From Podarcis pityusensis (lineage: Eukaryota): a stretch of DNA of 64,000 nt. Within the stretch, counting starts at the first letter, position 1; each line of letters starts with the position of its first letter. The position numbers and the translations under genes are program-made. The stretch is from NCBI GenBank assembly GCA_964106645.2, contig OZ067038.1; one strand, given 5' to 3'. Below the pieces are notes generated by a model. The model worked only from the letters and a program-made list of their open reading frames with translations. It was not told the DNA's origin and did no database searches. Of the stretch, positions 18,116 to 64,000 are shown one piece after another.

Positions 18116-20460
18116 GTCCCACTGCTCCCCTGTATTTCTGCAGCTGCAAGGGAAGGACAAGTGAACACACAGCAGAGTTTGGTCTGTGCTGACTGGGGAC
18201 GGCAAAACATCCACATTCACAGTGTTATGTCTGGAATAGTGAGTCCTCTTCCTAGTGTTGGCCTTCCAAGCAGGGTGTTGCGTCTTGCCCACGCTTCCTA
18301 GTGGTGATGCAATCTTTTTTGGTCTGCTGCTTCAATTTGTCTGTCTTTGTCTATTTGTTTTGTTTTTTTGCACGCCGCATCGTCAGCTAGATATCCCCGC
18401 TGCTCGCACCCACTGTTCATGCCCCCCCCCAGTAGGAAGGAAAGCAGTTTTATTGGATGGAGGGGGGTGCCAGAGGGTCTACATTGTAAATATTTTTATG
18501 AAAACATTGGTTTGTTTAGTTGGGAAGAGGGAGAAGGGATTGGTGGTATGGAGAAAACGGGTTGAGGTGGGTTTCTTCCCTTGAGTTAGAAATTTCGGGG
18601 TGGAGGGGAAGTAGGGCTTCAAAGGAGACATCATGTGGAGTATATTTGCTGTCAGGACAAGATGAGGGGGCACAATTGAGCTTTGCTGCCCACCTTGTAC
18701 AAGAATAGCAGCTGCTTTTGCACTTCCGAGCACTAGCCCTTTCCCTTAACTTTCACCCTACAACCCAATTTCCTTTATTCAGTTGTGTGAATATGACACC
18801 TGATTTGGGCTCCAGGAAGTGGGTAGTCTGGTCCTGTAGATTCTCAACTCCAAGGCCAGGCTGTCTGCAGGCTCTTTAATCTACTTGGGAAAACACAAAG
18901 CAATTTGCAGTGACTTGAAAACTTCCTCTTCCACTGCTGCACTTTAAAAGCAAAATCCCCTTATATCTACTTCTTGTCACCTTTCTCTAAGGCCTGGCTG
19001 AGCCAGCTCTGCCCTATGATGCACCCTAGCCAGAGCACAATCTTCTGCTGCCCTCAGCCTTGCCTTAGGGAAAAGAGCAGAGCAGCTTGAAAAGGAATGA
19101 TGTGTGTAGGACATTGGGAAGAACATTCTCCAACTCCAAGCTCTCTAGGCTTATCTCCACTCTACTCCCACTCTCAAATCACTTTTGAAACCTCAGGGGT
19201 TTCACTCTTTATAGTCTTTTGCTAATTGGAGTAGTGTGCCCATTTATGTTCTCAGGAGAAAGGAGGGACTAAATGGGAGTGGAGGATTGTTTGGGTTTTT
19301 TTCTCCAAAGGTGGTTACTGCCCCTGATACCTATTGCTGCTTGCACAGGTTTGCAGAATATCAATTCTAGGATCTGATGGCTGAGTCTTTCAAATATTGA
19401 TTTTAAGTTGCAATGATAAAGTGGGTTTTTTATTATATGGAAACAGAGATGCCCCCTATTGGGTGTGTATCTTTGTTAAGAGGCAGCAGTCTGTCTTCAC
19501 TAATAGCGTTCTCGGCTGAGTGGATACTGCTTGCTCCCAGTAATGGATCTCATTTTTTGCCTGTTTTCCAATGATTGCTGGAGAAGCTGGATGGGTTGGG
19601 GAGTGTCATGAATTGGCCAGTTTCTTGCTGTTGAAAATTTTCAAGCTGGGCACTTCCAGGCGATTCCTGACGCTTTCACATTCTCACAAGTGACTGCAGC
19701 TTTGCAGATGCAGGCCCTGAAGCTGTGATAGCTTGCCCTGCAGGCCTCAGCATTTTAAACTGCACTTCTGAGAGTTTATGACCAAGGTGAAGGTGCTGCC
19801 TCTCAGCAGGAGGGGCCACCAATCAATTCCAAGCACATTTGCAAGACTCCAGTTCTTGCCTTTTGCACCCTTCAAGTTTCATCGCTTGCTGAGTCAGTCA
19901 CTGGCCCACTCTTTGTATCAAGGTTGCCTGTCTCAGGTTCCTTCAGTCATAGGGCAATGATTTTCTTGAAATACAAAATGATATTGTTCTCCAGAGTTGG
20001 TTTACTTTCTGACCTGTGTTGCCTGCCCCATCCCATCCCAGCCCCAGTCAAATGTTGAGGGGAGGATGCCTGTTAATACAGCTTCCTCCTAATGTCTGCA
20101 CTTTGGAAATGGGCAGCCATGTAGCACTGAGTGTGGAGCTTGCTCGCCTTTGTGTTGTGTCCTGAGCACAAATTTTGCTACCCCTACCACCAGCCAGAAG
20201 CCCTAGCTTTCCCATTCTGGTGCAGGAGGCATGTTATATGTTTGTGTTTTTCTCTGAAGCTTTAAGCTGTCTTCCTCTCCTTTGGTGGCAACAGCGCCAT
20301 AATGCTCCATGATAGGGGCCTTCTGAGGAAGGGCTGGGAGGCTGCTGATGTCACCCAGGAAAGGCAGAGGGCTTTGAACTGTGTAGCGGTGTTTATTCTA
20401 TGGCTAAATATTTAAAACAAACTGTAGTCTTTTTAATAAAAAAAGGTTCAAAGATGTGAA
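18116..20460 (+). other. RETREG2: Probable RETREG2 3' UTR with poly(A) signal AATAAA at 20435-20440
   Basis: Stretch with no recognised repeats after the stop codon, ending at AATAAA followed by T/GT-rich sequence. The end point is inferred. Confidence 0.55.
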
Positions 20461-22388
20461 TTTTGGGTTAAAAGTTCTAACTCTTCATCTTATCCAATCA
20501 CCCAGAAACCCCGCCTTTCTCAGTTTCTCAGGTATCCCTGATGCACTGGGATCTGGCAGCCATTTTAAGCCTATGTCCAGGTGGTTATTACCCTAGTTAT
20601 GGTCTTTCCTGATAGTATTCAGTATTCCATTGCACATGCATTGCAGCTCCACTAAGACTCCATTGTTCGCTCAAATTCAGGAAGTTATGTCCAGTGTTCA
20701 GTAACTCCTGTAGGTGAGCAGCTGGCACAACCTTGAACAGAAGGCAAGATGGCAGTAATGCTACACAAGCCATCATATCCTTTAGTATCTTCTCAGTTCC
20801 AGTTCTCACAACCACCCAAAGTTGTAGTAAGCATGTGCCTTGTACTATGTCAGGATCCAGGTGGGAATACACACAATTGCATGCTGTACCATACAGTTTT
20901 GTTTGTTGTTGAAAACTAGTGCATTTGGAGTGAAGAATAGAACTTTGCTCTTCATGCTAATGGATATGACAGCTTGAGGTGGTTTCTTAATGCTGCTGTT
21001 CCCCTTTATTGCCTCTCATTTAACAGCTACCCTAAGGTAACAGAAGTCTGTAAAGCCTATTAACAGCAGGTGTCATTTGAGGTTGGACATCTGGGTAAAG
21101 TAAAGGAACAGAGATACAGCTATAACTCTCCTAACTCATCTAACCTAAGTTCTTCCATGCAATGTGGAAACAGTTGTCAGTTCAGCTTACTTTTCTGCTA
21201 GATTCTCAAAGCAAGTAGATTAATCCAGTTTAGCTGCTTTTGATTCTATGGGCTCTACACCTAGTGTTCCCGGAGTTTAGCCCCCATGCACAGCAAAGAT
21301 GGACTTTCCAAACAAATGGTGCTAAGCTTGCAAAATTAGTTTACTACAGGTGCATTGGGTTCTTCAGCATATATGGTTTTCAGCCCATGGACTGCATTCC
21401 CTTCAGGCAGGCTTCCAAAGACCACATGCTAGTGCTGGTGATTGTAAATTTTAACTTTGAACTGTAGGTTCTTTCTATCCTACATCCAGGCAAGCAAAGG
21501 GCATTATCACTATGCTAGGACACATTTCAGCCAGGCAAAAACACTCAAGCAGGACTGCTAAGGGCTGTGAAGAAAAGTCCTAAGGATTAGATAGTGAGGC
21601 TTGGAGGATTGCATTTCGGGCCCGAGCCTGAGTTTTCTTATCTCAGACACACTGCATGATACAGTAGCTCTCACAAAAGCCTGCTTTTATTTGAGTGTAA
21701 GATTATGGCTCACATATCCACATTTATGCAGAAGTAAGCCCTATAATGTTCAGCAAAGCTTGTTTACAGCTGAATGTGTTTAGAATTGCAACCTTACTTT
21801 TTTTCATTTGTACATTCCCCCACTAATCCCCAACACAAATATGGAAGATAATTTTGCATGTTCAATTTTGTAACAAATGTTTCAAGTTAGGTAGATTATG
21901 TGGCAAAATGTTCATATATTTTCTGCATCTAAGTGTGTTTTTGGCATAGGGTGTAATTCAGTGTAGCACTCAGTGGTGTAGGTATGCATGAAATGAGGTC
22001 CCCAATCCTCTAGCACAGATTTTAGGGGAAGAGGGAGCCCTGTTGCATGAATGAATGCCATTCTGCACCCACAACTTATTTTTTAAGACCTCTGGGTGGG
22101 ATTCAACTCTCTTCCATCAATTGCCTCTAGGCTACATCCATATGGAGGAACATGTGAGAAAACAAACCAGGTTTATTACAAAAGCACATTATTAAATATA
22201 AAAAAAACAAGAGACCAACTGGGTCAGGGTCCTAGTCAAAGAAATACTAAAACAAATAATGGATGCAATCCATTAGTTGATCCAGAGGCTCCAGGGGGCA
22301 TACTATAACTCCTATCAAAAACTGAAAATGCTTCCGGCCTTCTGACCCACAACTTAACCTGCAAAAGTCAAAGCAAAAGAGGTACTAC

Positions 22389-22394: not shown

Positions 22395-22873
22395 CTGGCC
22401 AGCAATGCCACTGTTCTCTTTTCTGCTTTTAAGTAGGAATGCTTGGTGACTTGTGGCTGTCCACTCTTCTTCAAAGGGAAAGGAAGAAATTCTCAGAAAA
22501 AAAGAAAAAACAAAGACCAGTATCCCAAGGCACTTAATGTAGAGTGCACTGAGCTAGGGTTTTTGCTACACATGAGCTACACGTCTTGTTTAGATAGGAG
22601 AACACAGCAGCTTGGCTTTTTCCATGGATGGTTCATAGCAAGAAAATGGTGCTTGGATGGTGTCCTTACTGAACAGCGGACTGTGGTACCTCTGTTCAGA
22701 TGATGTAAAACAGAGTTCTACTTCCAACTTCAGCTAGAAAGACTAGCGCGCTCTTGACATTTTGGCATATTGAAGGCCACTCCAAGACAGTAGCTGCAAT
22801 GATATTTCAGCTCCATGGTTCTCCAAACCTCTGGTGTTTGGAAGGAAGAGCACGTTGGAACCCTCTTGAATTC

Positions 22874-25800
22874 TTAGGCACTGTGTGCAGGCTGCAGGAG
22901 GTGGATCAATTTTTTACAATGCCTTGATGATGAGGGCCGTGGGCTGCTGTAAGCACTAGTCTGAGGTTTGTTACATGAAAGTGCTTCCAACTTTTCACTT
23001 GCTCCGAGTGACACCAGCACCTGGAAAGGAGATTGGGACAGATATATATTGTGCCCTGACATAGCCTATTGTGCTAAACTATGTAGGGCATTACCACAAT
23101 TACTTAGAGAAGGCCTGTGTTTTTAATCCTGCCTCTAACATCACTTCCGCATTATCAGGACACTGTGTTGGGACTTCCATCTACTGCAAGTAATGCACAG
23201 CTGATTGAGGAATATGTTATTTGGGGGATGGGACTGAAAACAAGGCCCCCTTTTGAGTAATTACATGGTAACTCCTTCAATGTGAATAACACAGCAATAG
23301 GATTCTATAGAGAGCCTCATAACTCCAGTATATCTTCAACGTCTGGTACTGAGAAAGATGTCATTCTGACAGAGCTGTTCAATAATGGAACGAACAGACT
23401 CCCATGAGAGGTGTTGGACTCTCCTTCCTTGGAAGTTGTTAAACGGAGGTTGGATGGCCACTTGTCACATACAATCTAGTTGAGATTCCTGCATTGTAGG
23501 GGGTTGGGCTAGATGGCCCTCAGGAACCCTTCCAACTTTATAATTCTATGATTCTTGGGGAACACAGTCATGTTTTCATAGAAAGGGGACTAGCAACTTA
23601 GGGTTGTATTCAGTGTACTGTCGGTGCAAGGCCTTTTGGCTGTGCAAAGTAACTCCCCTTCCTCCCTGCATACCCTCTAAGTCTGTTACGGGACTTCCAC
23701 AGCCATCCAAAGCAAATTTGGGGAAGGTTTGAGGTGCACAAGAATCAAGGAGAGTTCCATTGCACAAATGCCAATCCTTGCACTAACAGAGCAAGTGCAT
23801 TGGATACCACCCTTACACATAAAAAGTGATGATTGTAACTAGGTAAAGGAAGAATGAGATCTACTGGTGGGTGACCTAATATAAGCTCAGAGACACTTGG
23901 AACCAACAGAAAGTTAACATGGAAAAAACATCTATTCCTTGAGAATCCAGTGGTGGGATAGTTTGGAGCTCACTTATGTGCAACTGTTTTTGAAAGAATG
24001 GAACAGGTTGAGTTATATTGATAACTGCTTATTAAGATGGCAAAGCAAGTCAGGTATCACACACTGACTGTTTGGAAAGTGCTTCTCTCATAGAAAGGAA
24101 GGGTCAAGAGAATATGGCAGCTAATAGCAGCAATGAACTCTCAAGCCCGCCCCGCCCCCCGCCAACAAGAACCTACCAATGTCATATATTTTTTGCCCCA
24201 ATGTACAAACCTCAATTCTTGACCAGCAAGCAAAGCTTCATTATCCTCAACAACCATGGCAGGTAACCTTGCAATAAGGCTTCCATTATGCATTGTCAGG
24301 AATTAACTGAAGCACAATAAATCTGACTGCTGGTTTATTAGGGCCTGCCCTCAGCTGGCCGAGTCTTTTCCCTCCACAGTTGCTGAACTAATACCTGGTG
24401 GATCCTGGGCTGCTGGCCAATAGATCGAAGAGCAATGAGTGCTGCCTCTTGCACAGCTGGTTGCGAATCATGGCAGGCCACATCCAATAGACGACCAGGT
24501 ACCCTGCTCTGGATCAGCAAATCCTCCAGTTCCACCGACTGGCGGCCCAAGTTGCCCAGTGCTGAAGCCGCATTACAGCGGGTCTTGGCTTGCGGATCAC
24601 TCAGGAGCTGAACAACCCAAGGGACTGCTTTGCTGAGGGCTGGAGTAAGAGGGCCAGCCTGGTAGGCTGCATTGCCAACAGCAAAGCTGGCTGAGCGTCG
24701 CACATGTTCGTCCTCATCTGAAAGGCGTTCCAGCAGATGTTCCAGCAGCCCAATCTGGTCCTGCAGAACCTGAGGAAACCCCTGTCTGTGGCGCAGCAAG
24801 TTCCCCAAAAGGCTGCAAGTTTTGGCACGAACCGGGCATTCTTGGTGGCACAGCAGGTGGCTCAGTGGTTGGGAAGCAGAGTCTGAACCACATAGGAGTC
24901 TCTGTAGGAAAGGCAAGTGAGCTGGACTGGCCCGGGCTATGTGGGTGAGCAGAGAGAGCAAGTCTGCAGTAAGGGCTACTTGGTCTGATAGCAAAATGGC
25001 AGACAAGAAGGCAACAGCATGCTTTGAGGCAGCCACCCCCACCACCTGCTCAATGACTCCCTCGTCGCTCAGCACCAAGTGGCACAGGAGACTCAATGGC
25101 AACTCTGTCTCTGAGAAGGGAAGGTGGTGAATGCAGGCCTACAAAGAAAGCAAAAGCAGAATAGTGTCTCAAAGTGTGCATACCAGTATGAAGTTGGCAC
25201 CAACAAAGTTGTGTTTGTGCAAAGACTTCTGCTTATGCTATGGATCTTACTTTCCTCACCCTAGCCACAAAATCTATTTGTAGTCTTTCCACAAACTGGA
25301 CAACTTTGTTGGACATAACTCTGAACCTTTATCATTTTAAAAATGTTTCCCATAAAGGGTAAAAATTCCCTTATGTCTTTATGAGACTGGCATTTCCATC
25401 CCTTCCCCAGCCTACAACCCCCTTCAAAAAAGGCATTTGGTGCCTTGTTTTATGAAAAGCAGTTTTTTGAGTGCATCCACATAAGCACAACCACCATGAA
25501 TCAGAATGAAAGGCATTGCTTTGTGTGGAGCAGGGCAACTGGTCTGGCTAAGGCAGAGTCTGCATCTAGTGCTTAGACGACCAACATGAGAAAAGGTTTA
25601 CCTGGAGTAACTGTGCAGGGATTTCAGAGTCCCTTAGACCTGTTGTAATAAGCTCTAAAGTTTCAGGGTCCATGTCCAGAGCAAAGGGGAAACAGAACAG
25701 CTGGCAAATTTGGAGCACAACAGCTGATACCAGCTCTGGGTCACCATCCTCTTGCATCTGCCTGGAAGAGGGAAGAAAGCCGTCAAAGTGAGGTGTTAAC

Positions 25801-37800: not shown

Positions 37801-40800
37801 TTGATCACTCCTCCTTTCCCAAGAAGGATGTTTTGGGGTTTCATGTCACGGTGCAAGATTCGGTGGGAATGCAGATAATAGAGCGCCGAGACCAACTGAG
37901 AGGCAATATCTTGCACCTGAAAGAAAATGACAACCCTGATACTTTGCAAAGCCCATTTAATCCTGTAGGGATGCTCCACATCTCCAGCACAAAACTTCCA
38001 TTTCCTTTTGTTATCTTTGCTGATGCCCCTCAATTGTGAATCACAAGTCCTTCCCCAACACACAGAAATCTATTTGTATTATCCTAAGACAATTAGATCT
38101 ATTTTTATCCTTGAGGGCAGCAGAGAGCAAGCATTTCCACTCTTCTATGTACCCTTCAGGTATTTTATTTTTTTTAATGATTTTTATTAAAATTTCAATA
38201 AAAGTTAAACAGAAAAACATAAAAGTATAAATACAAAAACACACAATACATAATCCAAAAAGAAAAGGAAAACACAGAAAACAAAATACAAAAAAAAACA
38301 ACTAGAAAGAAACAGAACAATTAAAAACAATATCACTTTTCCATTTCCGTTTTTGAATTTACTTATTTTCTGGACTTCCTCATACCTCCCTCTTTTGTAT
38401 TCCAGTCCAAATTGTTTGTCCAGCAATTTCTTTTCCACTTTTTTAATCCCAATCTTTAATCTTAATATAACCAAATTTCCAATTCCTTAAACATCTTTAA
38501 TCCTAATCTTTAATCTTAGTCTATCAATAACTTTAACCTGTACAGCTGGAAACTACTTATTTTCGATCCAACATCACTCTAACATTCCTTAATTTTGCAA
38601 TGTTTCTGAAGATAATCTTTGAATTTCTTCCAATCTTCCTCCACCAACTCTTCTCCCTGGTCACGGATTCTGCCAGTCATTTCCGCCAGTTCCATATAGT
38701 CCATCAATTTCATCTGCCATTCCTCCAGCGTGGGAAGTTCTTGTGTCTTCCAATACTTTGCGATGAGTATTCTTGCTGCTGTTGTTGCATACATAAAGAA
38801 AGTTCTATCCTTTTTTAACACCATTTGGCCGACTATGCCCAGGAGAAAGGCCTCTGGTTTCTTAGGGAAGGTATATTTAAATACCTTTTTTAATTCATTA
38901 TATATCATTTCCCAGAAAGCCTTAATCTTTGGGCACGTCCACCAAAGGTGAAAAAATGTACCTTCAGTTTCTTTACATTTCCAACATTTATTATCGGGCA
39001 AGTGATAGATTTTTGCAAGCTTGACTGGGGTTATGTACCACCTGTATATCATTTTCATAATATTCTCTCTTAAGGCATTACATGCCGTAAATTTCATACC
39101 TGTGGTCCACAACTGTTCCCAGTCAGCAAACATAATGTTATGTCCAACGTCCTGTGCCCATTTAATCATAGCCGATTTTACCATTTCATCCTGAGTATTC
39201 CATTTCAGCAGCAAGTTATACATTCTTGACAAATTCTTAGTTTTGGGTTCTAACAGTTCAGTTTCTAATTTTGATCTTTCCACCTGGAAGCCAATTTTCT
39301 TGTCCAATTTAAATGCCTCTGTACCCTTCAGGTATTTGAAGACTGCAATCATGTCCATCTGCTGCTAGACTCCAGATTCAACGCTAGTTCAAAACACATA
39401 TGTTCACTCAGGCATCACTTGAAGTGTGACTCCAGATATTCTTATTTATTTAGGATAAGGGCTGTAGCTCAGTGGCAGAGCTTTGCATACAGAAGGTCCC
39501 AGGTTCAATCCTCAGCATCTCTAGATAGGGCTGGCAATGTCCCTTGTCTAGAACACTGGAGAGTCACTGCCAGTCAAAGCAAACATAATTGAGCTAGATG
39601 GACTAATGGTTTGGCTCAAGGCAGCTTCCTATCTTCTTATTAATAATCATGGTGAATTTTATACTGAGTATGTAATGTTTTATGGTTTATTGTGTTTTTA
39701 TATTGTACCATACACCACTTTTGATATTCCAATTTGAGCAATATATAAATTGGTTTAAAAAATTAATAAACAAAAAGACATACAGTACCAACTTCCTTAA
39801 ACCTTTCCTTGATTTAAGCTGTTCTAATATCATCCCTGGTATCAAATTCAGAGGGATGGGTCTCCAGTTTCTCAGATCATCTTTTTAAAGATTAGGACTG
39901 TCTTGTAAGCACCTCAGTCACTATTCCAGGAAATGTAACAGGTTCATGTCAAAGTACACAGCTGGAGGGTTTATGGTCTAGCAGAGACTGACACCTACCC
40001 ACACTCCAGCTACTCTCCCATTCCTGGAGTCATTCATCACACTGAATCCCCACTCACTCTTCTTGTCATAGTTACCTGCTCCTCAGGCAAGTTCCCATCA
40101 TCCTCAAGGATCTGAAAAAGCTCCCCTTCAGCATAATCTGTCACTACCACAACCTGAAGGAGATAAACAAGACAAGAATGCCAATGAGAACATTTTCAAA
40201 GGTGGGACACTTGTGGGTAGGGAATGACAATATGACTAAGCTCTCTGTGCTGTTTGAAGCCAACAGGAAACCACCATCAAAAGAAGAGTGTGCAGCAGCT
40301 ACCAACACATTCTTATTTGATGAAGGTCCCTATGGAGAGCTCCAAACTCTAAGTGTGTTGGGACATTCTTTGGATATTGTCATTCTGCTGATAGGACTTG
40401 GCAGGTTAATTGCCTGATGCAGCCTCATGAACCAATAGGCTTGATGTGGCAATCCAAACTTCCACAGACAAGATGTGTAATTGAGATAGCTGTTACCAAA
40501 ATGGATAAATTTTAGTTCACTCCTCCTAGGTACTCATTGAGACATCTGGAGAACACCATATAACCTAAATTTCATCAAACAAAATGTAGCCATTTTCAGG
40601 CCTTTCTGCTTCTTGGGGGATTTTCCACAGAGCCAGGAAGACACCATTTTCTTCTTCACCTCCCACATTTAAAAAGGACTCCCAGCAAGTCCCTTACCTC
40701 TTTATCAGTTTCAAAACTGTCAAGCATCTGGACAATGTTGGGATGATGAAGCCCCCTCATGATCTCAATCTCTCGCTGCAAATTCTTCAGCTCTTTCTGC

Positions 40801-52600: not shown

Positions 52601-53177
52601 CTTCCTTTTTACCAACTGCTCTCGATCCTTTGAGGACTCTCGCCCTCATTTCATAAACCCACCCTATTTTCTTCCATCATGTCCACATCCAGAAATTTCT
52701 TTTATAAAATCTCTGAAGTGCAGGATCTGTTTCTTCCTGAACCTTCCTAGTCTTTCCCATGCTTTCGCCTATTTGTCTGTGATATATTAGAGTTACTGTC
52801 CCACCCACATGCGTACAATAAGTTGATGACTGGGTTAAAACTAATACCTCAAGTATCTTCTCTCTCCACCCCCCCCCCCCCAAATGTATGAAAGAACAAT
52901 TCCCCCTTCCATGTTTTGCTGTTGTAACATTGGCAAGAAGAGCAAGTGCTGTTTCACACCTGGGTGTTGCTATAAATAGAAGTGGAACCATCCGCCTCAG
53001 TGGCACTGACAGTACGTCCTAACCCAGCCTGCATGGAGAACCTCATTGTAACCATTAATTCAGATCAAACAGACTTGGGAATTGTTAGAGATCTGGCAGT
53101 TATGTTCACAGTATACATAGCTTACTGCAAGGGTCCTTCTCTATTTAATATTAATGTTGCACACACACACACACATA

Positions 53178-53838: not shown

Positions 53839-55129
53839 TAATGTGTGTGTGTGTGTGTTTAATTTTTATTTGATTTTACGATACAAATTATAAAAAAGAT
53901 TTAAATATATAATCATATACAGAGATTCTTCCAAATCTCAGGACTTCCCTCCACCCCTTCCCTGGAGTCCCATTTTAAACATTTAAAACTGCGTCTTCTG
54001 CCATACTCTTATTATATCAACCTATATTTTCCATGATAATTGTTACACTACAAGTGTAATCAAAATCCTGCCCTTAATGCTGCATATATACTTGGGAGTG
54101 GGACTTCTCAGAAAACATGCAGGGGGTTATGCTGCATGTGTGGCTGTTAATTCAGCAAGAGCAAAAGGGCTCTTTTATCCCTATAAATATATCTCTTAAC
54201 AGTCTGCAGTCACTTGAGAATCTGGTCAAGTGCTAAGGTGTGTACCTTACCATACGGTGCCTACATACGACTGCTTTTCCATGTGATTACAGGCACCATA
54301 TGGTCAGCCTTAAAGTAGCCACCATGTAGTTCCTGGTAGTCTGAATCCATTCAAGAGAAAGATCTCTGTTGTTAAGGCTCCTCCCGATGTCCTTTTTATT
54401 CCACGTTCATGATGATTTCTGCTCATGATGCTATCGAAGTGATCATGTGTAACTTTTCATACCACAAATGTGTTTGGGGCTGGGGCCGAGAAAGGCATTG
54501 CCCCACTTTTATTGCACTGTAGCTCCTCCAGACACCAATAATAAGGTAGCATTGGGAAGCATCACAGAACAACTGATAAGCAGAGTAAATAATTCCCCAC
54601 CAATTCACTATTATTGTGGCATGAACATATTGAACACATTACTGAATACAACTACAATAAAACACCAGTCTGGAGGAGGGACCTTTGGCAAAAGCATCAT
54701 CATTTGAAAAAAGATACTTTCCAATTTATATTACATATCATGCATGTAATATTATTGAATTAAACAAATAAGTCACAACCAGATAAATGCATAAAATCTT
54801 TTCTTGTATATCTAGCATCAAGACAGAAATCTAATCCAAGTTTCTTATCCCTGTTTAAAAATAGAATAATAACTGGCATTTGAACTTCATTTTTTTCCAG
54901 TTTAAGGAGGCAGGAGAGATTTAGCGTGGGGTGCCCAACTATAGCACACACAGCCATCAGCTTTAGTCATTTATTTGTTCAATCCTAATTGCACACAGAG
55001 GAGGTATTCATTTGCAAGCAAGATCAAAGATACATATGCAAGCAAGATGACAGATGATAAAATTTTGTCCCATCCCTGAGGCCATTCAAATCTGGATCAT
55101 ACTGTTCATCCTCCCATCAACTTCCCTGC

Positions 55130-55167
55130 TATAAAGTATGCACAACCCACAGTGCAAACATCACTTA
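55130..55167 (+). promoter_or_regulatory. TATA box and Inr-like element of the olfactomedin-like gene
   Basis: TATAAA at 55130-55135, TCACTT about 30 nt downstream (55161-55166), and ATG at 55179. Confidence 0.6.
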
Positions 55168-55178
55168 CTCCAGTGAGG

Positions 55179-58150
55179 ATGAAGGCAGTTCTGCAACAGC
55201 TGCTCTGTGTGGCTTCCTTTGTAAGTATCTACTTCAATAGCTTCTGGCTGACCTGGGGTGGCAAGACCTAGCTACATCGTAGAGGATGAGGAGAATCATC
55301 TTTTGACTTTCCACAAAGCTAACAGAATGAAACAACACACATAAAAATCCCTGTTGAAAAAACATCTGCCCAGACATGATATACAAGGCAATAGTGATAT
55401 TTACTGATAATGAAATACTAAAACAAATAATAACGGGGACTATATGTGTGCAGAACAAGGGAAAGAAGCTGAAGGAATACTGTATGTAGCAAGTAACCAA
55501 AGAACAAGTAGTTAAAATATTAAAAATATAAACTTACATTTCATCTAAATGATAGTGAAGTTGATACCTGGTGGATTTCCTTGAGGAGGGAATCATACAG
55601 ATAGGATGGTACAGCTGATCACATCTTCTCTCTGGCCAGCACCCATCTCATCTCAGGTGTTAAGGGCATACTGAGGAACGTCTCATCAGGTGACCTTTGC
55701 ATCTAGGCAGGAGCTGTTGTCTCTTTGGAGATTTGATATATGTGATTTGATAACTGAGGTGTTTATAATCTGAAAGATAAAAGCACAGAAGTAGCTGCAA
55801 CTCTTACTGAGCGATGTTAGAAACAACAAGCCGGCATTTCACAATTTTTTCAAAGGAGAATTGTGACTGAAGTCACAGAACTCAGCTGGCTAGCATTTAT
55901 TTATAAATTTATTAGCAGATAAAAGCATTCCTGATTTCTCTTGAAGCATGTGCGTTTATTGGTCCAATTCTTTTCTTCTTTTTAAACATCGCAGCCAGGC
56001 TCGCTCCTGAAAGAAGCTGGCAGGGAGCTCCGAGCTTGCCCGAGGGCTTTCCACCTAGTGCCTCTCACCCCCTCCTTCATCCGAACTCAGGGGTGAATTA
56101 TGGCAACAGCAGGTGAGGCAGCGTCTTTTCATTCCCTGAAAAGATGAAGGGAGGCTGATGTACTCCCCATATCAGCCTCTAATTACCTCTTGCAAGCTGG
56201 ACACGATGTTATTAGCAGCCATCTTTCAAGGCGCCCCTAGTGGCCCCCCCACCAAGGTAACTCTCAAGTATAATATAGTTGTCTAAAACAGCAAATTGGA
56301 TTATATTTGTGTTTAACTCTTGCAGTCCTATTCTGTGATGTTTACTCAAGAGATGGGGAGAAATTAGATTCAGTTTGCATTTAAAGGTGCAACTATCAAA
56401 TTCACATTCACCATAACACGGCCATCTTTCAAAATTTACACTTGTCCAAATTTTGTGATGTGGTTCTCCAACTAATGTTTTTAAAAATGTGCATATTAGG
56501 AGAAAGTGTGCATACAATGTATTACTGAAAATAACATGCAAAAATATTGGGGGAAATGCTTGAAAAATGTGTACATTAGTCAAAACTTCATACAAATATC
56601 TGTTTGTTAGGAACAATGCTTAAAAATGAGGATTTTTTAAAATTGAAAATTAATGAAGCTGTCAACATTAGGTCCATTATTTTCCATAGGTCTACTCTGA
56701 ATAAATCTTAGTTGAATACCACCCAAAGTCCTACTGCTCACAATGACCAGGACAGAAGGTAGGAGATGGTTTTTCATTCTTTTTTGCTGCACCATCTCCA
56801 GACTGATGCAGCTGAGGGACACAAGGATCACAGGATCTGTCAAGCACTGGATCAGGGGATCTGTAGATCCAAAAGATCTGAACCAACAATGCCCTCTCTT
56901 GAATATTGTACTTTGGTACTTGCTTCTGGCTGCCACCAGCAGGAGAACCACCAGTGTCCTATGGGAGAGCCATCCCATCTGCTAGGCCAAAACCTGAGTC
57001 GACCACTGTAGTAGAGGCACCAACACCACCACCAACAGTCTCCTCTTCTACCAGAGAGTCCACAATGTACCTTCGTAATCCTCCCCAGCCATCAACATTG
57101 GGTGTGTGTTAGGACTACACTGTTACTAAAAACAATAAAAACAGTATTGTTCAAGCATTCTATTTTCTGTCACAGTGAGGTATGGCATATTCTTTCTGCA
57201 ACCCGTATTTCTCCACACCCTTCATTTATTCTACTGATTACTCCCACTGCTGACACTTGTTCCACTGCCAGGGCTGACCCTCCTATAAGGCTGGGGGAGG
57301 GAGGTAGCTGCCTTGGGTGATGGAAGCCCAGGAGTTGATGCTCCTGTGGAGACCCCACCCACCCAACCACTCCACTGCTGGTGGAGAAACAGTAGTGGTG
57401 CTGGCTTCCAGAAAGATCTCATAAGATCTTGCCAGAACCCACTGGTGCTGCTGCTTTGTGGGCAACATGTTTCCATTTTGCCTCAGGTGGAGAAACAGGG
57501 TGTACCACCCCTGCCCACTGCTTTTGGGATTATGAATGGAGCCTGTCATATAAATTTTACGTGGCTCCTTTTGTCCTAGGATTGCAAACATTCATAGCTT
57601 AAAAAAAATAACAATTGGAGACTGAGATCCATGGAATGTCACATGTGAGGACAAACCTCTGGTCTCTGTCACCAAAATTATACAAATTAGTATTAGGGAA
57701 AAGATACTTCTTAAATTTAGGACTGAGGTGCGCTCATCCTTGAGGGAAGATGCTCAGAGGAAAGGTTAAATTCTCCATTATTGTCCTTAAATCAAATAGA
57801 ATGTGACTCTAGACATTTGAGTAAAGACAACTCAAGGTGCAACTGCTGATCAGATTTGTTCCAGTACTGTATCCATTAACGGCATTTGTATTTGGATGCC
57901 AGAGAGGAGACTGCAAGAATGATTGACAGTACTTCCCCAGTCATCCTTCACCCTTCCTACTTCCTATCTACCTTACCAGGTCATAATCAATGGTGGCCAT
58001 ATGTGGCAAGTAATAGGCATGAGGGATGCAAGAGGTCAGTGTCTTTGCAGCGTAGAGCTCAATGATATTATCTTCCCTGTGCAAAAAGTGGAAGCATTGG
58101 AGTCCAACTTCTACAACGTGACTGGATTGCTACAGAATCACTTGAACCAG
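55179..58150 (+). CDS. Olfactomedin/OLFM4-like secreted protein, first two coding exons (rest presumably beyond the window)
   Basis: Exon 1 is 55179-55220 (MKAVLQQLLCVASF, donor GTAAGT). Exon 2 is 57980-58150 (long pyrimidine tract + CAG acceptor, donor CAG|GTAAGC, phase 0-0) and encodes VIINGGHMWQVIGMRDARGQCLCSVELNDIIFPVQKVEALESNFYNVTGLLQNHLNQ. This parallels the recalled OLFM4 segment [29 protein letters not shown] and frog olfactomedin CVCEVLLPDSSFPAKRVGALE. Confidence 0.78.
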
Positions 58151-58754
58151 GTAAGCAGCAGCTATATCACCATGGAGTAGTAGTTAAATGATGCAATGTT
58201 TGCAGTATTCAAATGCCTATAATTCCACAGTCATGGAGGATGATATATAAAGTGAAAGCCACCACAGAAGTCTACTTGGTTGGATTATGACAGGTCCTCA
58301 AGGACTACTGTAGTGCGTACGTATATTTATTCAGTTATACAAATATCTATATTCTGCTAATTCATTAAGAAATATCAAAGAGGTTTGCAACAATACATAA
58401 AACCATACAATCAAAACTAAGTAAAAAACTTATAATCAGATTACTATAGTGGAAAGATGTATCCTTAATTGCCTGCATAAGCCTGATGGAATAGAAAAGT
58501 TTTCAGCAGGCATTTAAAAGCTGAAACAGAAGATGCCTGTATCAGCTATCTCCAAAATACAATGAAAAACACCTATTTATCTCCCCCATTAATCACAACG
58601 ACAACTTTGGCCAGCAGGAAATAATCAAGCAGGCATGATAGCTGCTCCCACAGAAGTCTACTTGTGACCATTGCAGCAGTCATGTTGGCAACAACGATGA
58701 GCATATTGGCGAAGTGGTGTGCACCCTGTCCCAGAAACATTTTAAATTATAAAA

Positions 58755-59220
58755 AGAGGAGCTATGCTGGATCAGGCCAAAGGCCCTTCTAGTCCAGCAT
58801 CCTGTTCTCATTGTGGCCAGCCAGATGCCTGCAGAAAGCGCGCAAGCACAACACAAGTGCGACAGCACTTTTCCCACGTGATTCCCAGCAACTGCTTCCA
58901 ACAGTGATGAGAGAATGTAAACATTGTGGCCAGCAGTCACTGGTAGCTTTGTCCTTCATGAATTTGTCTCATCCTTTTTAGAAGCCATCCAAGTTGGTGA
59001 CCATCACTATCTCTTGTGTTAGCAAATTCCACCGTTTAACTTTGTGCTGTGTGAAGAAATGCCTCCTACTATTTGTCCTTGATCTTCCAACTTTCATCTT
59101 TGTTGGGTGACCCCGAGTTCTAGAATGATGAGAGAGGGAGAAAAAGGTCCCACCCTACTTCCTTTTTTTCTAAACTAAAAAGCCCCCAAACCTTTCCCCA
59201 CAGTGGAGTTTCTTCAGTTC
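58755..59220 (-). mobile_element. Degenerate CR1 LINE 3' region
   Basis: Reverse complement of the tail type seen at about 16560-16940 (GCTGGATCAGGCCAAAGGCCC.TCTAGTCCAGCATCCTGTTCTCA). Confidence 0.8.
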
Positions 59221-62102
59221 TCACTATACCTTTTCCATTCCTCAGCTGCCTCATAGGAGAGACATAAAGGATGCAGAGTCCACAAATATTCCACAGTACC
59301 TTCGCACAATGTATTTCATTTTTGGTACCAGGTCTTGTCTTGTCTTCATCATGAAGTATTGTAATTTAGAACAGATGAACATGAAAACACCCATATATGT
59401 ACAACATGCAACAACTTTACTTAATCTTCTCTAACTGAGCAAGCTCACTGAGGAACTTGCTCTATAGATTCCGTTCATCATAAAGATGCAGTAACATATA
59501 TCATCAGGGGTGCATGCAAAGGGGGCTGCAGAATAGGAGAGAGGAGGTGGCATGGAAATGGAGTGGTCCGTGTACAAGGGAGAGTTGAAAAAAGGAGGAA
59601 GGAGGTGGTAGGGGAAAGGAAGTGACGGTGATAATGGTATGTGTGCAAAGGGGGCCTGCAGAACAGCAGGGAGGAGGAAATACAGAAATGAGGGTGGACT
59701 GTGTGCAAGAGGAAGTTGCGAAGGAGGAGGGAGGAAAAGGGGGCTTGCAGTAAAAATGGGCAGTGCAAAGTCTCATTTGAAAAATATATATATATTTCAC
59801 AAATAAAATGCTTTTATCTGGTATTTTGCTTAATGTTTTCCATATTTGCAACTTAGTCTACTTCTGTTACATATTTCTTATAGCACCACATTGCTTAAAG
59901 TCATCGTTATTCAAACGGAGCACTTCCTAAAAAAACCAAAGAGCTGTCATGGTGGCAGCTGTCCCAATGTTGCAGTCCATATGTTGTTGGACTACAACTT
60001 CCATCATCCATGATCATTAGCTAAGCCACCTGGGGATGGTGGGTTTTGTAGTCCAAGAATATCTGGGGACCCAAAGTTAAAGAACACTGACCTAGTGGGA
60101 GTGCAGATGGACTACTACTGAGGTATACAACCTTTGACTCCCTCTGTTTTGCTGCCTGCCTCATTTTCCTTTCAGTGCATTGGGTGCTCTATGAGGGAGA
60201 GGATTTATTGTAATCATTGATTCCTATGATGGTGCTTCTCGCTTTCCCCTTCATGAATAAGGGGAACTAAAGTGTGTGTGTGTGTGTGTGTGTGGCCAAG
60301 AGATGCAAGCATTCCTCAGGAGGAATCATAACTGTCCAAATATCTAATCTTTAAAAACATCACCTTTCTTTCCTTGTCCAATCTTACCCACCCAGTCCTC
60401 TGCATTAGGAGGAAATGTTTGACCACCTCTTGAAATCTCATCATCAAACCTGACACAAGGATTCCTGAGGTGGGGGTGGTATCCATTACCATTTGGGGGC
60501 TGGGCACCATTTTGAATCAAGAATGTGGATCAAAACATCACTATGGCATGACTTGGCCTGGTTTTTTGTATAGGCTGCCTCTTGAACTATCATTGTCAAA
60601 CTTGGCGTGTGGGTTCCTGAAGAGGCGGTAGTGGACTTTGTCACCTTAGACACTAGACGCCATTTTTAATCAAAATAGTGGACTGATACCTCACTTTGGT
60701 GTGACATAGGTTTGACTGCCTCTTTGAGACATCATCCCTAAACACTACACAAGTATTTCCAAGGTGGGAAGAGTGAGTGTGTACATTGATGTTTGGGTGC
60801 TGGGCACCATTTTGAATGAAAATTGTGAACCAAGACATTATTTTGGTGTTACTTTGCTCATTTTTGGCACAGGTTCAGTCATCTGTTGAGATCATAACGA
60901 AACGTTGCACAAGGGTTCCCAAGATGGGGGCAGCAATCTTTGGCAATGTTTGGATGCTGGGTGCCAGGCCTGTGCAGAGCTTGTCTGAGACCCATGGCAG
61001 ACATCACCAGATGACTGCGAGGAATGAGGTATTATTGGCATGACAGTCCAGCAAACCCCTGCCCCCCCCACCGGCTTAGCCCTCTGAGGCCCGGGGCAGG
61101 TATGCTTGGCTCCCCCCACTCTACAAAGGCTTCCTGGTCACCATCTTGAATCGTGATGGCACACCAAAACATGACTTTGGCATGACTTCACCCAATTTTT
61201 GGTGTGACATGTCTAAACTCACAAATTACACTATCTGTTTAAAAACAACAACAACAGGTTCCTAAAAATTCCCAGGCAGTGCCAGGCACCCCCTGCTAAT
61301 AAAAGTGGGGGAACCATCTTAGTGATATTTTATATTAAATCCTGATGGGGTTGTGTGCCTTGTGTCTTACAACACATATCTTCCATCTAATAGATAAGAG
61401 CACAGGTTAGACATAATGGTCACAAGTTATCTCTGCTTTGTTGCCTTTGCAGTAAGTTTCACTCACTGTAGGAAGCAGCATTGCCAGATCTCCAAGTCAA
61501 GTCACAATAAAGAGCTTCTCAGTCCTTTGAAGTTAGCTAACAGTTCAATAACTGTAAGCGACCCTAGGCCAGTGCATACTGTCTATGCTTCCATAGATAG
61601 CCAGGTTTCCCCTGCAATGAGCACCTATTGGCGCCGGGAACAGAAGAAACAGTGAGCTTCTTCTAAAAATATCCCATGCACACATAATGTGTAGGGAGTT
61701 CTCGCCATTCAAAACAGTGATTAGTAATGGACAACCGGTGTTCTGTTTAATAAATATAATGAAACCAGTAAGGAAGTATCAACAGAGTTTCTATGGAATC
61801 TACAGTGCAATCCTATACTCAGAAGGGAAGTGAGCCTTGCTGAGTTCAATGGACCTTATTCCCAGCTCAGGTAAATGTGAATGGTATGACATCATTAGAA
61901 TCCCAATATCTTTAAAGCTGACCAATCAGCTCTTTCCCCCATTAAATCTGGGCACCAAATTAACAAATGCATTCTATTCAGCTCAATATCCATTCTGTGT
62001 TTTTAATCATAACCTTGGCTGGCAGGGATGAGGGACTAACCTTCAGAAATAAGTTATGGACCTAGGTTTGCTTGGCATTCATGGATTTGCCATTATAATA
62101 TG

Positions 62103-62277
62103 CAGTGCTTTTTTCTGGGGGAACGCAGGGGTACGCATACCCCTAAACATTTTGTGAATCTTTGTACTTTTGTCATTTACTGTTTTTATTTTTCCCAGTT
62201 TGAGATATAAAATGGTGATTTTCTTGAGTCAAAATGAGAGTACCCCTAAATGTTTTTTTAGGGGAGGGGAAGCACTG
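62103..62277. mobile_element. hAT-type MITE
   Basis: Termini CAGTGCTT / AAGCACTG with 8-bp TSD ATAATATG at 62095-62102 and 62278-62285. Confidence 0.85.
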
Positions 62278-63856
62278 ATAATATGTTTGCATGGTGTATA
62301 ATAATTGCCTGAAATAGTGGGTTTTCATTATGACACATGTGGAGTACGGAGCCGATGTGATGTGTGAGGTGGATTCCATTTGATGCCTTTCCACTCAGAG
62401 AAGGCATCTGATAATGGAAGAGGAGTGGAGTTCATTTTCATCAATTCACTGTGTTCTAGAGGGTTCTTCAACCCCCTGGAACTGATTCTTTGGGAGTACA
62501 GGGGGAATTAGCAAAAACTGTCATTTCCTCCTTCTCTATTGGGCACCATGGGTATCTCTCCCAGACCCAAAGCCCTTCCACGAGCACAGGTGCGCCAACT
62601 GGATCCCACCATGTGTATTTTTTGTTTTCTGGCCCACGTTTTTGTCCTTCAAGGCCTAGCAAGGAGGACTGGATCAGGGTAAAATCTGAGGCATTAAAAT
62701 ATTCCAATGTTCTTTGTTCATTATTTCAAAATGTGGTCTTAACAGAGGCAGAAGAGGCACAAAGCACATGAAGACTTTTTGTAGCCCACTCACACATATT
62801 CTTATTTTATCTGATTGGGCCTAAACACCTCCTCAGAGGGGCACATCATTGTGCAAACAAAACTCAATTTGAAATGTTCATAACATCCAGTCCAATCCCA
62901 GCAAATTCCACTCTGGCTCATTCTACTACTTCCCCCAATGCCATCCCTTTTATAAAGAGGGTTCAACAAAAACGTCCCAGACCAACTTAGCAAACCCTCT
63001 GAAACAATTAGGATGTTTTGGCTGCTCCTGTACCTCGCTGTGGCTTCCTTGGTGAGTATTTTGCCCAGTGAGGGAATGTGAACGAACTGGTGGAAGTGAG
63101 ATAACCTAGGGTTGCCATTTTTCAAAAAGTAAAAATCAGGACACCCCGAAAATTGTTTGTTTGTTTTTTACAGAAATGCTCCAAACACATGATTTTTCGA
63201 TTGACTTGCCTAAGATCCAGGACAAAGTGCTGCCTTTCAGAAATTCCCTCGGAGGTCAATTCTGCCTTTGAAATCCCTAGATAATCCCAACCCACCCTTC
63301 AAAATGTAGTACTTCCAGAAAGTGGCTTAATATTGTAAATGGGTTGTCCAGATATCACAAATGTAGTGGTGTTTTTTTTTAATTTACCAGATTTTCCGTA
63401 GCAAGGATAAATCCAGATTAACTAGGAGGGAAATACAGGCTAACAATCTGATGCTGATGTACTGGGGATGCTATTCCATTCATGAATGAGGAACACTTAC
63501 CTGTGATTCCTGCATAGCAGGGGTGGAATAAATGACCTTTGAAATCCCTTTCAAGTCTACAGTTCTACGACCCCACAATAAACACCCACCTGGAAGCACC
63601 CCAAAAGCCCAAGACGTACGAGAAAACAAATGATTATTTCCCTTTGGCTTTGACACATCAAACAGGGTTTTAAATGCAATAATTCCTACTTGGAAATAAT
63701 TTATACAGTGGTATAAAGAGCAGGAAACAATGCAAAGACTTGTGGGAGCAAAGAAGGCATGACATGGGTCTGGAGATTCTTGCATTTCATTCAATATTGT
63801 GAAACAATGTTTATATTCAGGAATCACATGAGACCATAGCTGTCAACTTACAGATT

Positions 63857-63917
63857 TGAAAATAAGGGACCAGCAGCCTTGAAAATAAGGGACCAGCAGC
63901 CAAAATAAGGGACCTGC
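63857..63917 (+). repeat. Short tandem repeat (AAAATAAGGGACCAGCAGC, about 2.7 copies), probably subterminal repeats of a DNA transposon running off the window end
   Basis: The units are directly visible; the transposon context is inferred. Confidence 0.6.
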
Positions 63918-64000
63918 AATCTCACCAGGCACTCTTCCTGTCCTGCAGTCTGTCCTGTCTTCCTGTCTTCCTGTCCTCCTGCGGTCTGGTCAAACTCATG

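What the first reader, a model, noticed from the sequence alone, without database searches (positions are those of the whole stretch)
55130..58150. Hidden olfactomedin/OLFM4-like secreted-protein gene downstream of RNF25
Seen: TATA box, ATG, a 42-nt exon with a GTAAGT donor, a 2.76-kb intron and a clean 171-nt phase-0 exon. Spliced, these give MKAVLQQLLCVASFVIINGG-HMWQVIGMRDARGQCLCSVELNDIIFPVQKVEALESNFYNVTGLLQNHLNQ: a signal peptide, a CxC motif, FPxxKVExLE, the start of a coiled coil and an NVT sequon. Known: this is the N-terminal architecture of the OLFM4/frog olfactomedin/tiarin subfamily of disulfide-linked mucosal glycoproteins, and human OLFM4 is on another chromosome, unlinked to RNF25. 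Inference: a non-mammalian paralog with a short frog-like N-terminus, possibly a mucus, vomeronasal or gland protein. I found no exon 3 before 64000, so it cannot be confirmed as intact.
Basis: partly seen in the sequence, partly recalled or inferred. Interest (0 to 1): 0.8.

Follow-up and report, generated by a model that had tools for sequence, protein, structure and literature searches.

The report
Truncated lizard olfactomedin-like gene stump
The two exons are real and belong to the OLFM4/frog-olfactomedin family, but here they are only the front end of a gene that has lost its last three exons, OLF domain included, to a 6-kb deletion, so this is most likely an ordinary dead gene remnant.

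Summary
TATAAAG lies at 55130-55136. Exon 1 is 55179-55220 (MKAVLQQLLCVASF, donor GTAAGT). Exon 2 is 57980-58150 (57 codons, AG acceptor, GTAAGC donor).

Exon 2 matches squamate "olfactomedin-like" proteins that carry a Pfam OLF domain. It is 88% identical to Lacerta agilis over the exon and 54% to leopard gecko. RefSeq models in relatives use the same exon 1/exon 2 join. The CxC and F-P motifs are shared with bullfrog olfactomedin and with bird and mammal OLFM4. In L. agilis the ortholog also lies downstream of an RWD+RING (RNF25-type) gene.

The gene is not intact. The window is colinear with the L. agilis locus at 90-94%, except that about 6.0 kb of L. agilis is missing at window 59771|59772. 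That piece holds exons 3, 4 and 5, including the whole OLF domain and the stop codon. Contigs from four public DNA runs, covering three organisms, bridge this junction, so it is not an assembly error.

About 3.2 kb further on, a second TATA box and exon 1 (63013-63051) start the neighbouring paralog, which runs off the window.

My best reading is a lineage-specific 5' stump, probably a pseudogene. No RNA data were available, so I could not test whether it is spliced onto the neighbouring gene. Interest is low.

The parts
55130..55136 (+). TATAAAG box of olfactomedin-like gene A, 43 nt upstream of the ATG
   Evidence: Read directly. It is conserved in L. agilis within the 93.9% identical block window 54574-55895 = L002 9525-10854. 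A paralogous promoter lies at 62951.
55179..55220 (+). Exon 1 of gene A: 14 codons, MKAVLQQLLCVASF (hydrophobic, signal-peptide-like), donor GTAAGT at 55221
   Evidence: It differs from L. agilis exon 1 (L002 10133-10174) at one base. It is 93% identical to the N-terminus of the Rhineura RefSeq model P0008.
55221..57979 (+). Intron 1 (2759 nt), containing a high-copy repeat around 55900-56900
   Evidence: Colinear with L002 10175-12815 at about 94%. Contig depth rises 10- to 100-fold at 55900-56899.
57980..58150 (+). Exon 2 of gene A: 57 codons, phase 0 to 0, with the CxC motif, F-P, the KVEALE stretch and an NVT sequon; donor GTAAGC at 58151
   Evidence: phmmer E 1.1e-12 to gecko olfactomedin-like P0001. 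BLASTP gives 54% identity, E 2e-22. It is 50/57 identical to L. agilis exon 2. The two Cys are invariant in the 14-sequence alignment.
58151..59771 (+). Remaining 5' part of intron 2 of gene A, with a high-copy repeat insertion around 58300-59100
   Evidence: Window 57387-58686 = L002 12204-13527, 59094-59733 = L002 13521-14156, and 59729-59771 = L002 14513-14555.
59771..59772 (.). Deletion breakpoint. About 6.0 kb present in L. agilis (L002 14556-20567) is absent here; it holds exons 3, 4 and 5, the stop codon and about 330 nt beyond it
   Evidence: clean junction ...GCAGTGCAAAGT|CTCATTTGAAAAA.... It is bridged by contigs in X1 (59533-60005), X2 (59549-60032), X3 (59517-60005) and X9 (59517-60005).
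59772..62950 (.). Former intergenic DNA between gene A and gene B; repeat-rich, with no olfactomedin-like coding similarity
   Evidence: Window 59771-61327 = L002 20568-22142, continuing colinear to 63833 = L002 25622. tblastn of 15 family proteins finds nothing here at E<1.
62951..62957 (+). TATAAAG box of the neighbouring paralog, gene B
   Evidence: The promoter plus exon 1 aligns with that of gene A.
63013..63051 (+). Exon 1 of gene B: 13 codons, MFWLLLYLAVASL, donor GTGAGT. The rest of gene B lies beyond 64000
   Evidence: It is orthologous to L002 24789-24827 (MFWLLLRLAVASL), which precedes L. agilis exon 2B (…KCICSIELPDSTFP…) and a called 456-aa OLF-domain gene.

Best explanation
The finding is the 5' stump of one of two tandem olfactomedin-like genes (here called A and B) that lie downstream of the RNF25-type gene in lacertid lizards. 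The stump keeps the promoter, the signal-peptide exon, exon 2 with the CxC motif, and 1.6 kb of intron 2. In the lineage of this genome, a deletion of about 6 kb removed exons 3 and 4 (coiled coil), exon 5 (the whole OLF domain and C-terminal tail), the stop codon and the adjacent 3' flank. It joined intron 2 directly to the A-B intergenic DNA. What remains cannot encode an olfactomedin. It is most likely a non-functional unitary pseudogene remnant whose exons still look clean only because the loss is recent. Shown: the exon structure, the homology, the synteny, the deletion, and its presence in several individuals and species. Inferred: loss of function.
For: (1) Exon 2 is homologous to OLF-domain proteins. 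(2) The gene structure in relatives has five exons. In gecko L001 they are 8.4-8.7 kb (exon 1-like), 10055-10225, 12756-12983, 14131-14304 and 22536-23621. In L. agilis L002 they are 10133-10174, 12816-12986, 15039-15257, 16612-16866 and 19089-20237. (3) The window is colinear with L002 at 90-94% from the RNF25-type 3' end through gene B's exon 1. The one relevant exception is that L002 14556-20567 is missing at window 59771|59772. (4) tblastn of 15 family members against the whole window finds only exons 1 and 2, and no + strand ORF longer than 115 aa lies in 58151-64000. (5) Contigs from four DNA runs bridge the junction with more than 200 nt on each side. The runs cover three organisms, and organism A comes from two different studies. 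(6) Exon 2 is no better conserved than its introns: 93.6% against 92-94%. All 7 amino-acid differences from L. agilis fall on the window's lineage when polarised with the Zootoca protein. (7) No annotated protein of 338-1076 aa other than those of Lacerta and Zootoca carries this exon 1/2 sequence.
Against: Both exons keep an open frame, an intact ATG, a TATA box and consensus splice sites identical to those of L. agilis. The stump could therefore still be transcribed and spliced. dN/dS for exon 2 (0.46, from 7 non-synonymous and 4 synonymous changes) cannot be told apart from the family's normal value (0.42 for Lacerta against gecko), so neutral decay is not demonstrated. No RNA run was available, so silence is not shown. 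Sequence beyond 64000 was not seen. Logan contigs drop rare variants, so a full-length allele segregating in the population cannot be excluded.
Confidence: 0.72

Rival explanations
1. The stump has been co-opted as an alternative promoter and 5' exon pair for the downstream paralog B. Transcripts would start at 55.15 kb and splice exon 2A (which ends in phase 0) to exon 2B or 3B beyond the window. The result would be an in-frame chimeric olfactomedin with A's signal peptide and CxC module.
For: The promoter, ATG, open frames and both donors are intact. The deletion removed gene A's 3' end including the stop and about 330 nt beyond it, so gene A's own polyadenylation site is probably gone as well. 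Gene B lies on the same strand only 4.9 kb downstream. It has the same exon architecture, with exon 1 also ending in phase 0 (39 nt).
Against: No annotated protein carrying exon 1A/2A words was found outside Lacerta and Zootoca. No RNA data exist to support it. Exon 2 shows no excess conservation over the introns. Gene B has its own TATA box and signal-peptide exon.
Confidence: 0.13
2. The stump makes a short secreted peptide of its own: exon 1 plus exon 2, then read-through of the unused donor to a stop 9 codons later (…NHLNQVSSSYITME*), about 80 aa in all. It would carry the CxC motif and could cap or interfere with disulfide-linked olfactomedin multimers.
For: ORF 57923-58180 shows the frame stays open for 9 codons past the donor before a stop. 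The signal-peptide-like exon and the two cysteines are retained.
Against: This is pure inference. There is no transcript evidence, no identified polyadenylation site and no conservation signal. All seven replacements on this lineage are compatible with relaxed constraint.
Confidence: 0.06
3. The gene is intact and only looks truncated. Either exons 3-5 lie beyond 64000, or the 6-kb gap is an assembly collapse.
For: The window ends 5.85 kb after exon 2, and intron sizes vary between species. For example, gecko intron 4 is about 8 kb.
Against: The DNA after the breakpoint is orthologous to the L. agilis A-B intergenic region and then to gene B's promoter and exon 1, in order. Any downstream OLF exons therefore belong to gene B. 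The junction is present in contigs from four runs and three organisms, which rules out a one-off assembly error.
Confidence: 0.04

Closest known systems
Lacerta agilis 'olfactomedin-like' (P0017, 615-aa RefSeq model; locus CM020416.1:84.03-84.06 Mb = L002)
   Same: This is the ortholog. The neighbour is the same: an RWD+RING gene ends about 9 kb upstream. The TATA box is conserved. Exon 1 differs at 1 of 42 nt and exon 2 at 11 of 171 nt (50/57 aa). The splice sites are identical, the flanking DNA is 90-94% identical, and a second OLF gene follows downstream.
   Different: L. agilis has exons 3, 4 and 5 and a complete OLF domain (Pfam PF02191). The window lacks that 6-kb segment entirely.
Squamate 'olfactomedin-like' clade A (gecko XP_054826063.1 = P0001, plus Rhineura, Anolis, Pogona, Varanus and others)
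   Same: Five-exon structure, and the same exon 1/exon 2 join (MK.(V/L)L.QLL.VA.F|VIV.GGH). Exon 2 is 51-58% identical.
   Different: These are full-length proteins of 540-572 aa with an OLF domain. The window copy stops after residue 71.
Bullfrog olfactomedin (Aquarana catesbeiana, P0058) and vertebrate OLFM4
   Same: The N-terminal module is shared: a signal peptide, the CxC cysteines (invariant in alignment A3), a following F-P and a (V/L)E.LE stretch. These are also the best non-squamate matches to the full-length ortholog, at 30-39% identity with E 1e-64 to 1e-107.
   Different: In a quick midpoint-rooted tree the squamate A clade sits on a long stem, next to another squamate-only clade. 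The amphibian olfactomedins and the bird and mammal OLFM4 sequences fall on the other side. It is therefore a squamate paralog lineage, not an OLFM4 ortholog. Exon 2 is only 21-38% identical to these proteins.

Membership tests
Olfactomedin-domain proteins (Pfam PF02191 OLF) | An OLF beta-propeller domain of about 250 aa encoded by the gene | tested here: not met
   tblastn of 15 family proteins finds no OLF-domain similarity anywhere in the window. No + strand ORF longer than 115 aa lies in 58151-64000. The orthologous OLF exon (L002 19089-20237) lies inside the segment deleted at 59771|59772. Orthologs do have the domain (E 2.2e-65).
OLFM4 / frog olfactomedin subfamily | An N-terminal CxC cysteine pair after the signal peptide, followed by a conserved F-P | tested here: met
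   Alignment A3 of 14 sequences includes bullfrog olfactomedin and bird and mammal OLFM4. Both Cys are invariant and F-P is at least 90% conserved.
OLFM4 / frog olfactomedin subfamily | A cleavable N-terminal signal peptide | not testable with these tools
   Exon 1 (MKAVLQQLLCVASF) is short and hydrophobic, and it is conserved at the N-terminus of RefSeq models. No signal-peptide predictor was available.
OLFM4 / frog olfactomedin subfamily | A coiled-coil region between the CxC module and the OLF domain (exons 3-4) | tested here: not met
   Exons 3 and 4 (L002 15039-15257 and 16612-16866) fall in the deleted segment and have no match in the window.
OLFM4 / frog olfactomedin subfamily | The full-length ortholog's nearest relatives outside squamates are olfactomedin or OLFM4 proteins | tested here: met
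   In one search, every named non-squamate hit to the L. agilis ortholog is amphibian olfactomedin or olfactomedin-4-like, or bird or mammal OLFM4. The tree is; it is midpoint-rooted and contains no OLFM1-3 or myocilin outgroup.
Processed or unitary pseudogene / truncated gene remnant | Orthologous position retained but essential coding exons missing, in more than one individual | tested here: met
   Colinearity with the 6-kb gap. The junction is bridged in 4 DNA runs from 3 organisms.
Processed or unitary pseudogene / truncated gene remnant | Lack of expression, or neutral sequence evolution | tested here: inconclusive
   No RNA run holds the stretch. dN/dS is 0.46 against a family baseline of 0.42, from only 11 substitutions.

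The most novel reading that the evidence does not exclude
After the deletion, the surviving promoter, signal-peptide exon and CxC exon of gene A were captured by the downstream paralog B as an alternative 5' end. This would be a naturally occurring exon-shuffled olfactomedin. Its multimerisation module would come from one paralog and its coiled coil and OLF domain from another, under a second promoter with possibly different tissue specificity.
Probability: 0.13. Interest if true: 0.45.

Novelty: new member of a known kind. Interest (0 to 1): 0.2.

Why it matters
The result matters mainly as a correction. The exons are real and the family call is right. However, this copy is a decapitated remnant and should not be annotated as a new secreted-protein gene.

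It also documents three things of modest comparative interest.
- Squamates carry a lineage-specific, fast-evolving tandem cluster of OLFM4/olfactomedin-type genes next to RNF25.
- One member was lost by a clean 6-kb deletion in a group of related lacertids, while Lacerta and Zootoca keep it.
- Several RefSeq models in the family miss or mis-extend the short first exon.

This would be useful for anyone studying gene turnover in mucosal or chemosensory secreted proteins of lizards. It is not surprising to a specialist.

Tried and rejected
- Pfam scan of exon 2: no family. This was expected, because Pfam models only the OLF domain.
- PDB sequence search with exon 2: only a chance INAD PDZ match at E 0.21.
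- ESM Atlas feature search with exon 2: no usable hit.
- The three other phmmer hits (P0002-P0004) are repetitive, low-complexity proteins matched through many short stretches. I rejected them as spurious.
- Search for exons 3-5 in the window by tblastn with word size 2 and E up to 20: only noise.
- Search for RNA-seq runs: none holds the stretch, so the exon 1-exon 2 junction and the fate of the exon 2 donor could not be tested.
- Earlier notes of this scan: nothing near the place, and nothing under 'olfactomedin'.
- Literature search on olfactomedin plus lizard: nothing on this gene cluster.
- The careful maximum-likelihood tree did not finish in time, so only the quick tree is reported.
- Complex prediction and structure prediction were not used. 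A 57-aa fragment of a truncated gene would not change the verdict.

Full report
**Observation**

- TATAAAG is at 55130-55136, and the ATG is at 55179.
- Exon 1 is 42 nt (55179-55220) and encodes MKAVLQQLLCVASF, followed by GTAAGT. My first try was one base off.
- Intron 1 is 2759 nt and ends in a pyrimidine-rich tract plus AG.
- Exon 2 is 171 nt (57980-58150), is open in phase 0, and is followed by GTAAGC.

I never submitted the joined 71-aa peptide to any tool.

**Homology**

Pfam, PDB sequences and the ESM Atlas gave nothing for the 57-aa exon 2.

An exhaustive phmmer scan of 1.84 billion representatives gave one genuine hit. It is P0001 = XP_054826063.1, 'olfactomedin-like' of the leopard gecko (E 1.1e-12; pairwise 54% identity, E 2e-22). 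P0001 has a full Pfam OLF domain at residues 208-473 (E 2.2e-65). The other three hits are repetitive proteins and I rejected them.

A word search with the N-terminal 205 residues of P0001 returned 15 squamate 'olfactomedin-like' proteins. Against the window, all of them hit exon 2 (E 1e-16 to 2e-30), and several also hit exon 1.

The RefSeq models from Heteronotia, Euleptes, Paroedura and Rhineura begin MK.(V/L)L..LL.VA.F|VIV.GGH.

The nearest relatives are the lacertids Lacerta agilis (P0017) and Zootoca vivipara (P0016).

**Family**

I searched with the full-length L. agilis ortholog.
- The squamate orthologs match at 54-87% identity.
- Squamate paralogs and the non-squamate proteins follow at 30-45%. 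The non-squamate ones are amphibian olfactomedin (including bullfrog olfactomedin, P0058), amphibian olfactomedin-4-like, and bird and mammal OLFM4, at 30-41%.

In an N-terminal alignment of 14 sequences, the two cysteines of the CxC motif are invariant and the following F-P is nearly so.

A quick maximum-likelihood tree puts the orthologs (clade A, with a related squamate clade x) on a long stem, sister to another squamate-only clade (y). The amphibian, bird and mammal sequences fall on the other side. This tree is midpoint-rooted, has no OLFM1-3 outgroup, and the careful search did not finish.

The lineage is a squamate paralog group, not an OLFM4 ortholog.

**Synteny**

In L. agilis (locus L002), a gene whose product has RWD and RING domains (the RNF25 architecture) ends at L002:1085. 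Gene A spans 10001-20240, and a second OLF-domain gene (B) is called from 26247.

The window is colinear with L002 from 48572 onward at 90-94% identity. The placement 'downstream of RNF25' therefore holds and is shared.

The gecko ortholog has five exons, including an unannotated exon 1-like block 1.3 kb upstream of its exon 2. That block is 71% identical to window 54899-55230.

**The decisive result**

Colinearity with L. agilis breaks once in a way that matters.
- Window 59729-59771 matches L002 14513-14555.
- The next base onward, 59771-61327, matches L002 20568-22142.

The missing L. agilis segment (14556-20567, about 6.0 kb) contains exon 3 (15039-15257), exon 4 (16612-16866) and exon 5 (19089-20237). 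Exon 5 carries the OLF domain, the C-terminal tail and the stop codon. About 330 nt of 3' flank is also missing.

The three-way alignment shows a clean junction...GCAGTGCAAAGT|CTCATTTGAAAAA.... This agrees with the lack of any tblastn hit to exons 3-5 and with the absence of long + strand ORFs after exon 2.

After the junction the window runs through the former A-B intergenic DNA to a second TATAAAG (62951-62957) and a second short first exon, 63013-63051 (MFWLLLYLAVASL, donor GTGAGT). Its promoter is visibly paralogous to that of gene A. It is orthologous to L002 24789-24827, which lies upstream of L. agilis exon 2B (...KCICSIELPDSTFP...). Gene B then runs off the window.

**Is the deletion real?**

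No RNA run holds the stretch. Twenty DNA runs from three coded organisms do.

I laid four of them on 55100-61099. In each, one contig of about 470-490 nt bridges 59771 with more than 200 nt on both sides.
- X1: 59533-60005, no mismatches.
- X2: 59549-60032, a different study of the same organism.
- X3: 59517-60005, organism B.
- X9: 59517-60005, organism C.

The deletion is therefore not an assembly artefact, and it predates the split of these three organisms. Lacerta and Zootoca, which have full-length annotated proteins, keep the gene.

**State of the stump**

Exon 1 differs from L. agilis at 1 of 42 nt. Exon 2 differs at 11 of 171 nt (93.6% identity), which is no better than the surrounding introns at 92-94%.

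Seven of the 11 differences in exon 2 are non-synonymous. When polarised with the Zootoca protein, all seven lie on the window's lineage: V3I, R9W, V14M, K15R, V27L, T42S, L47V.

dN/dS is 0.46, which cannot be told apart from the family baseline of 0.42 (Lacerta against gecko) on such small counts. The frame, ATG, TATA box and splice sites are all intact.

This pattern fits a recent loss with relaxed constraint but does not prove it.

A word search using the L. agilis exon 1-2 segment found no annotated protein of 338-1076 aa carrying these exons, apart from those of Lacerta and Zootoca. No gene model therefore joins the stump to gene B. This is weak evidence, because annotation coverage for this species is unknown to me.

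**Interpretation**

The best-supported reading (0.72) is a lineage-specific truncated gene. It keeps a promoter, a signal-peptide exon and a CxC exon, but it lost its coiled coil, its OLF domain and its 3' end to a single 6-kb deletion. It is now most likely non-functional.

The alternatives are:
- capture of the stump as an alternative 5' end of gene B (0.13). This is structurally possible because exon 1A, exon 2A and exon 1B all end in phase 0 and lie on the same strand;
- a short secreted CxC peptide of about 80 aa (0.06);
- an intact gene, or an assembly artefact (0.04), which the colinearity and the read evidence largely refute.

Only transcript data from this species can separate the first three.

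**Novelty**

The family, its exon structure and its position next to RNF25 are already captured by RefSeq annotation in related lizards. The only new item is the lineage-specific truncation, so interest is low.

Noticed in passing
window 62951-63051: A second TATA box and a signal-peptide-like first exon (MFWLLLYLAVASL, donor GTGAGT). They belong to a paralogous olfactomedin-like gene B, which continues beyond the window end. The promoter is recognisably paralogous to that of gene A.
   Followed up: yes
L002 24789-24827; L002 10001-10132; L001 8418-8734: Public gene models in this family handle the short first exon poorly. The L. agilis gene B model starts inside exon 2 (L002 26247) and misses exon 1B. 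The L. agilis gene A model P0017 starts at an upstream ATG and reads through the TATA box; the same frame has a stop in the window. The gecko model P0001 starts in intron 1 and misses the exon 1-like block.
   Followed up: partly
window 58700-58899 and 59900-60099 (also 55900-56899): Very high-copy interspersed repeats. Summed contig depth is 35,000-105,000, against about 10-35 for flanking single-copy DNA, in all four DNA runs. They are probably SINE-type elements inside the remnant of intron 2 and the intergenic DNA.
   Followed up: no
window 60264-60303: A (GT)n microsatellite. The reads tool skipped it as a repeat.
   Followed up: no
window 52999-53002 vs L002 4445-8697: A 4.2-kb indel between the window and L. 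agilis, in the spacer between the RNF25-type gene and gene A. The extra DNA is in L. agilis and is probably a transposon insertion there.
   Followed up: no
window 24338-25102 (-): A 254-aa ORF with HEAT/Armadillo repeats (Pfam E 8e-16). From position and from memory of the human 2q35 gene order, this is probably an exon of the STK36 (Fused) homolog, head-to-head with the RNF25-type gene. The gene name was not tested.
   Followed up: partly
window 9419-9865 (+): An ORF with a RETREG1-3 reticulon-homology domain (Pfam PF24456, E 2.5e-12). It is probably an exon of a RETREG2/FAM134A-like gene. The acidic 246-aa ORF at 17375-18115 (+) may be its last exon; this was not tested.
   Followed up: partly
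window 38579-39358 (-): A 259-aa ORF in an AT-rich block (GC 0.36) with no Pfam hit. Its Cys/His-rich tail looks like the C-terminal part of a LINE ORF2. That is my reading and was not tested.
   Followed up: no
L001 27673-33624: In the gecko, the gene downstream of the olfactomedin-like ortholog is a glycine N-acyltransferase-like gene (Gly_acyl_tr_N/C). A Gekko kuhli model (P0033) even fuses OLF and GLYAT domains, which is probably a gene-model merge.
   Followed up: no
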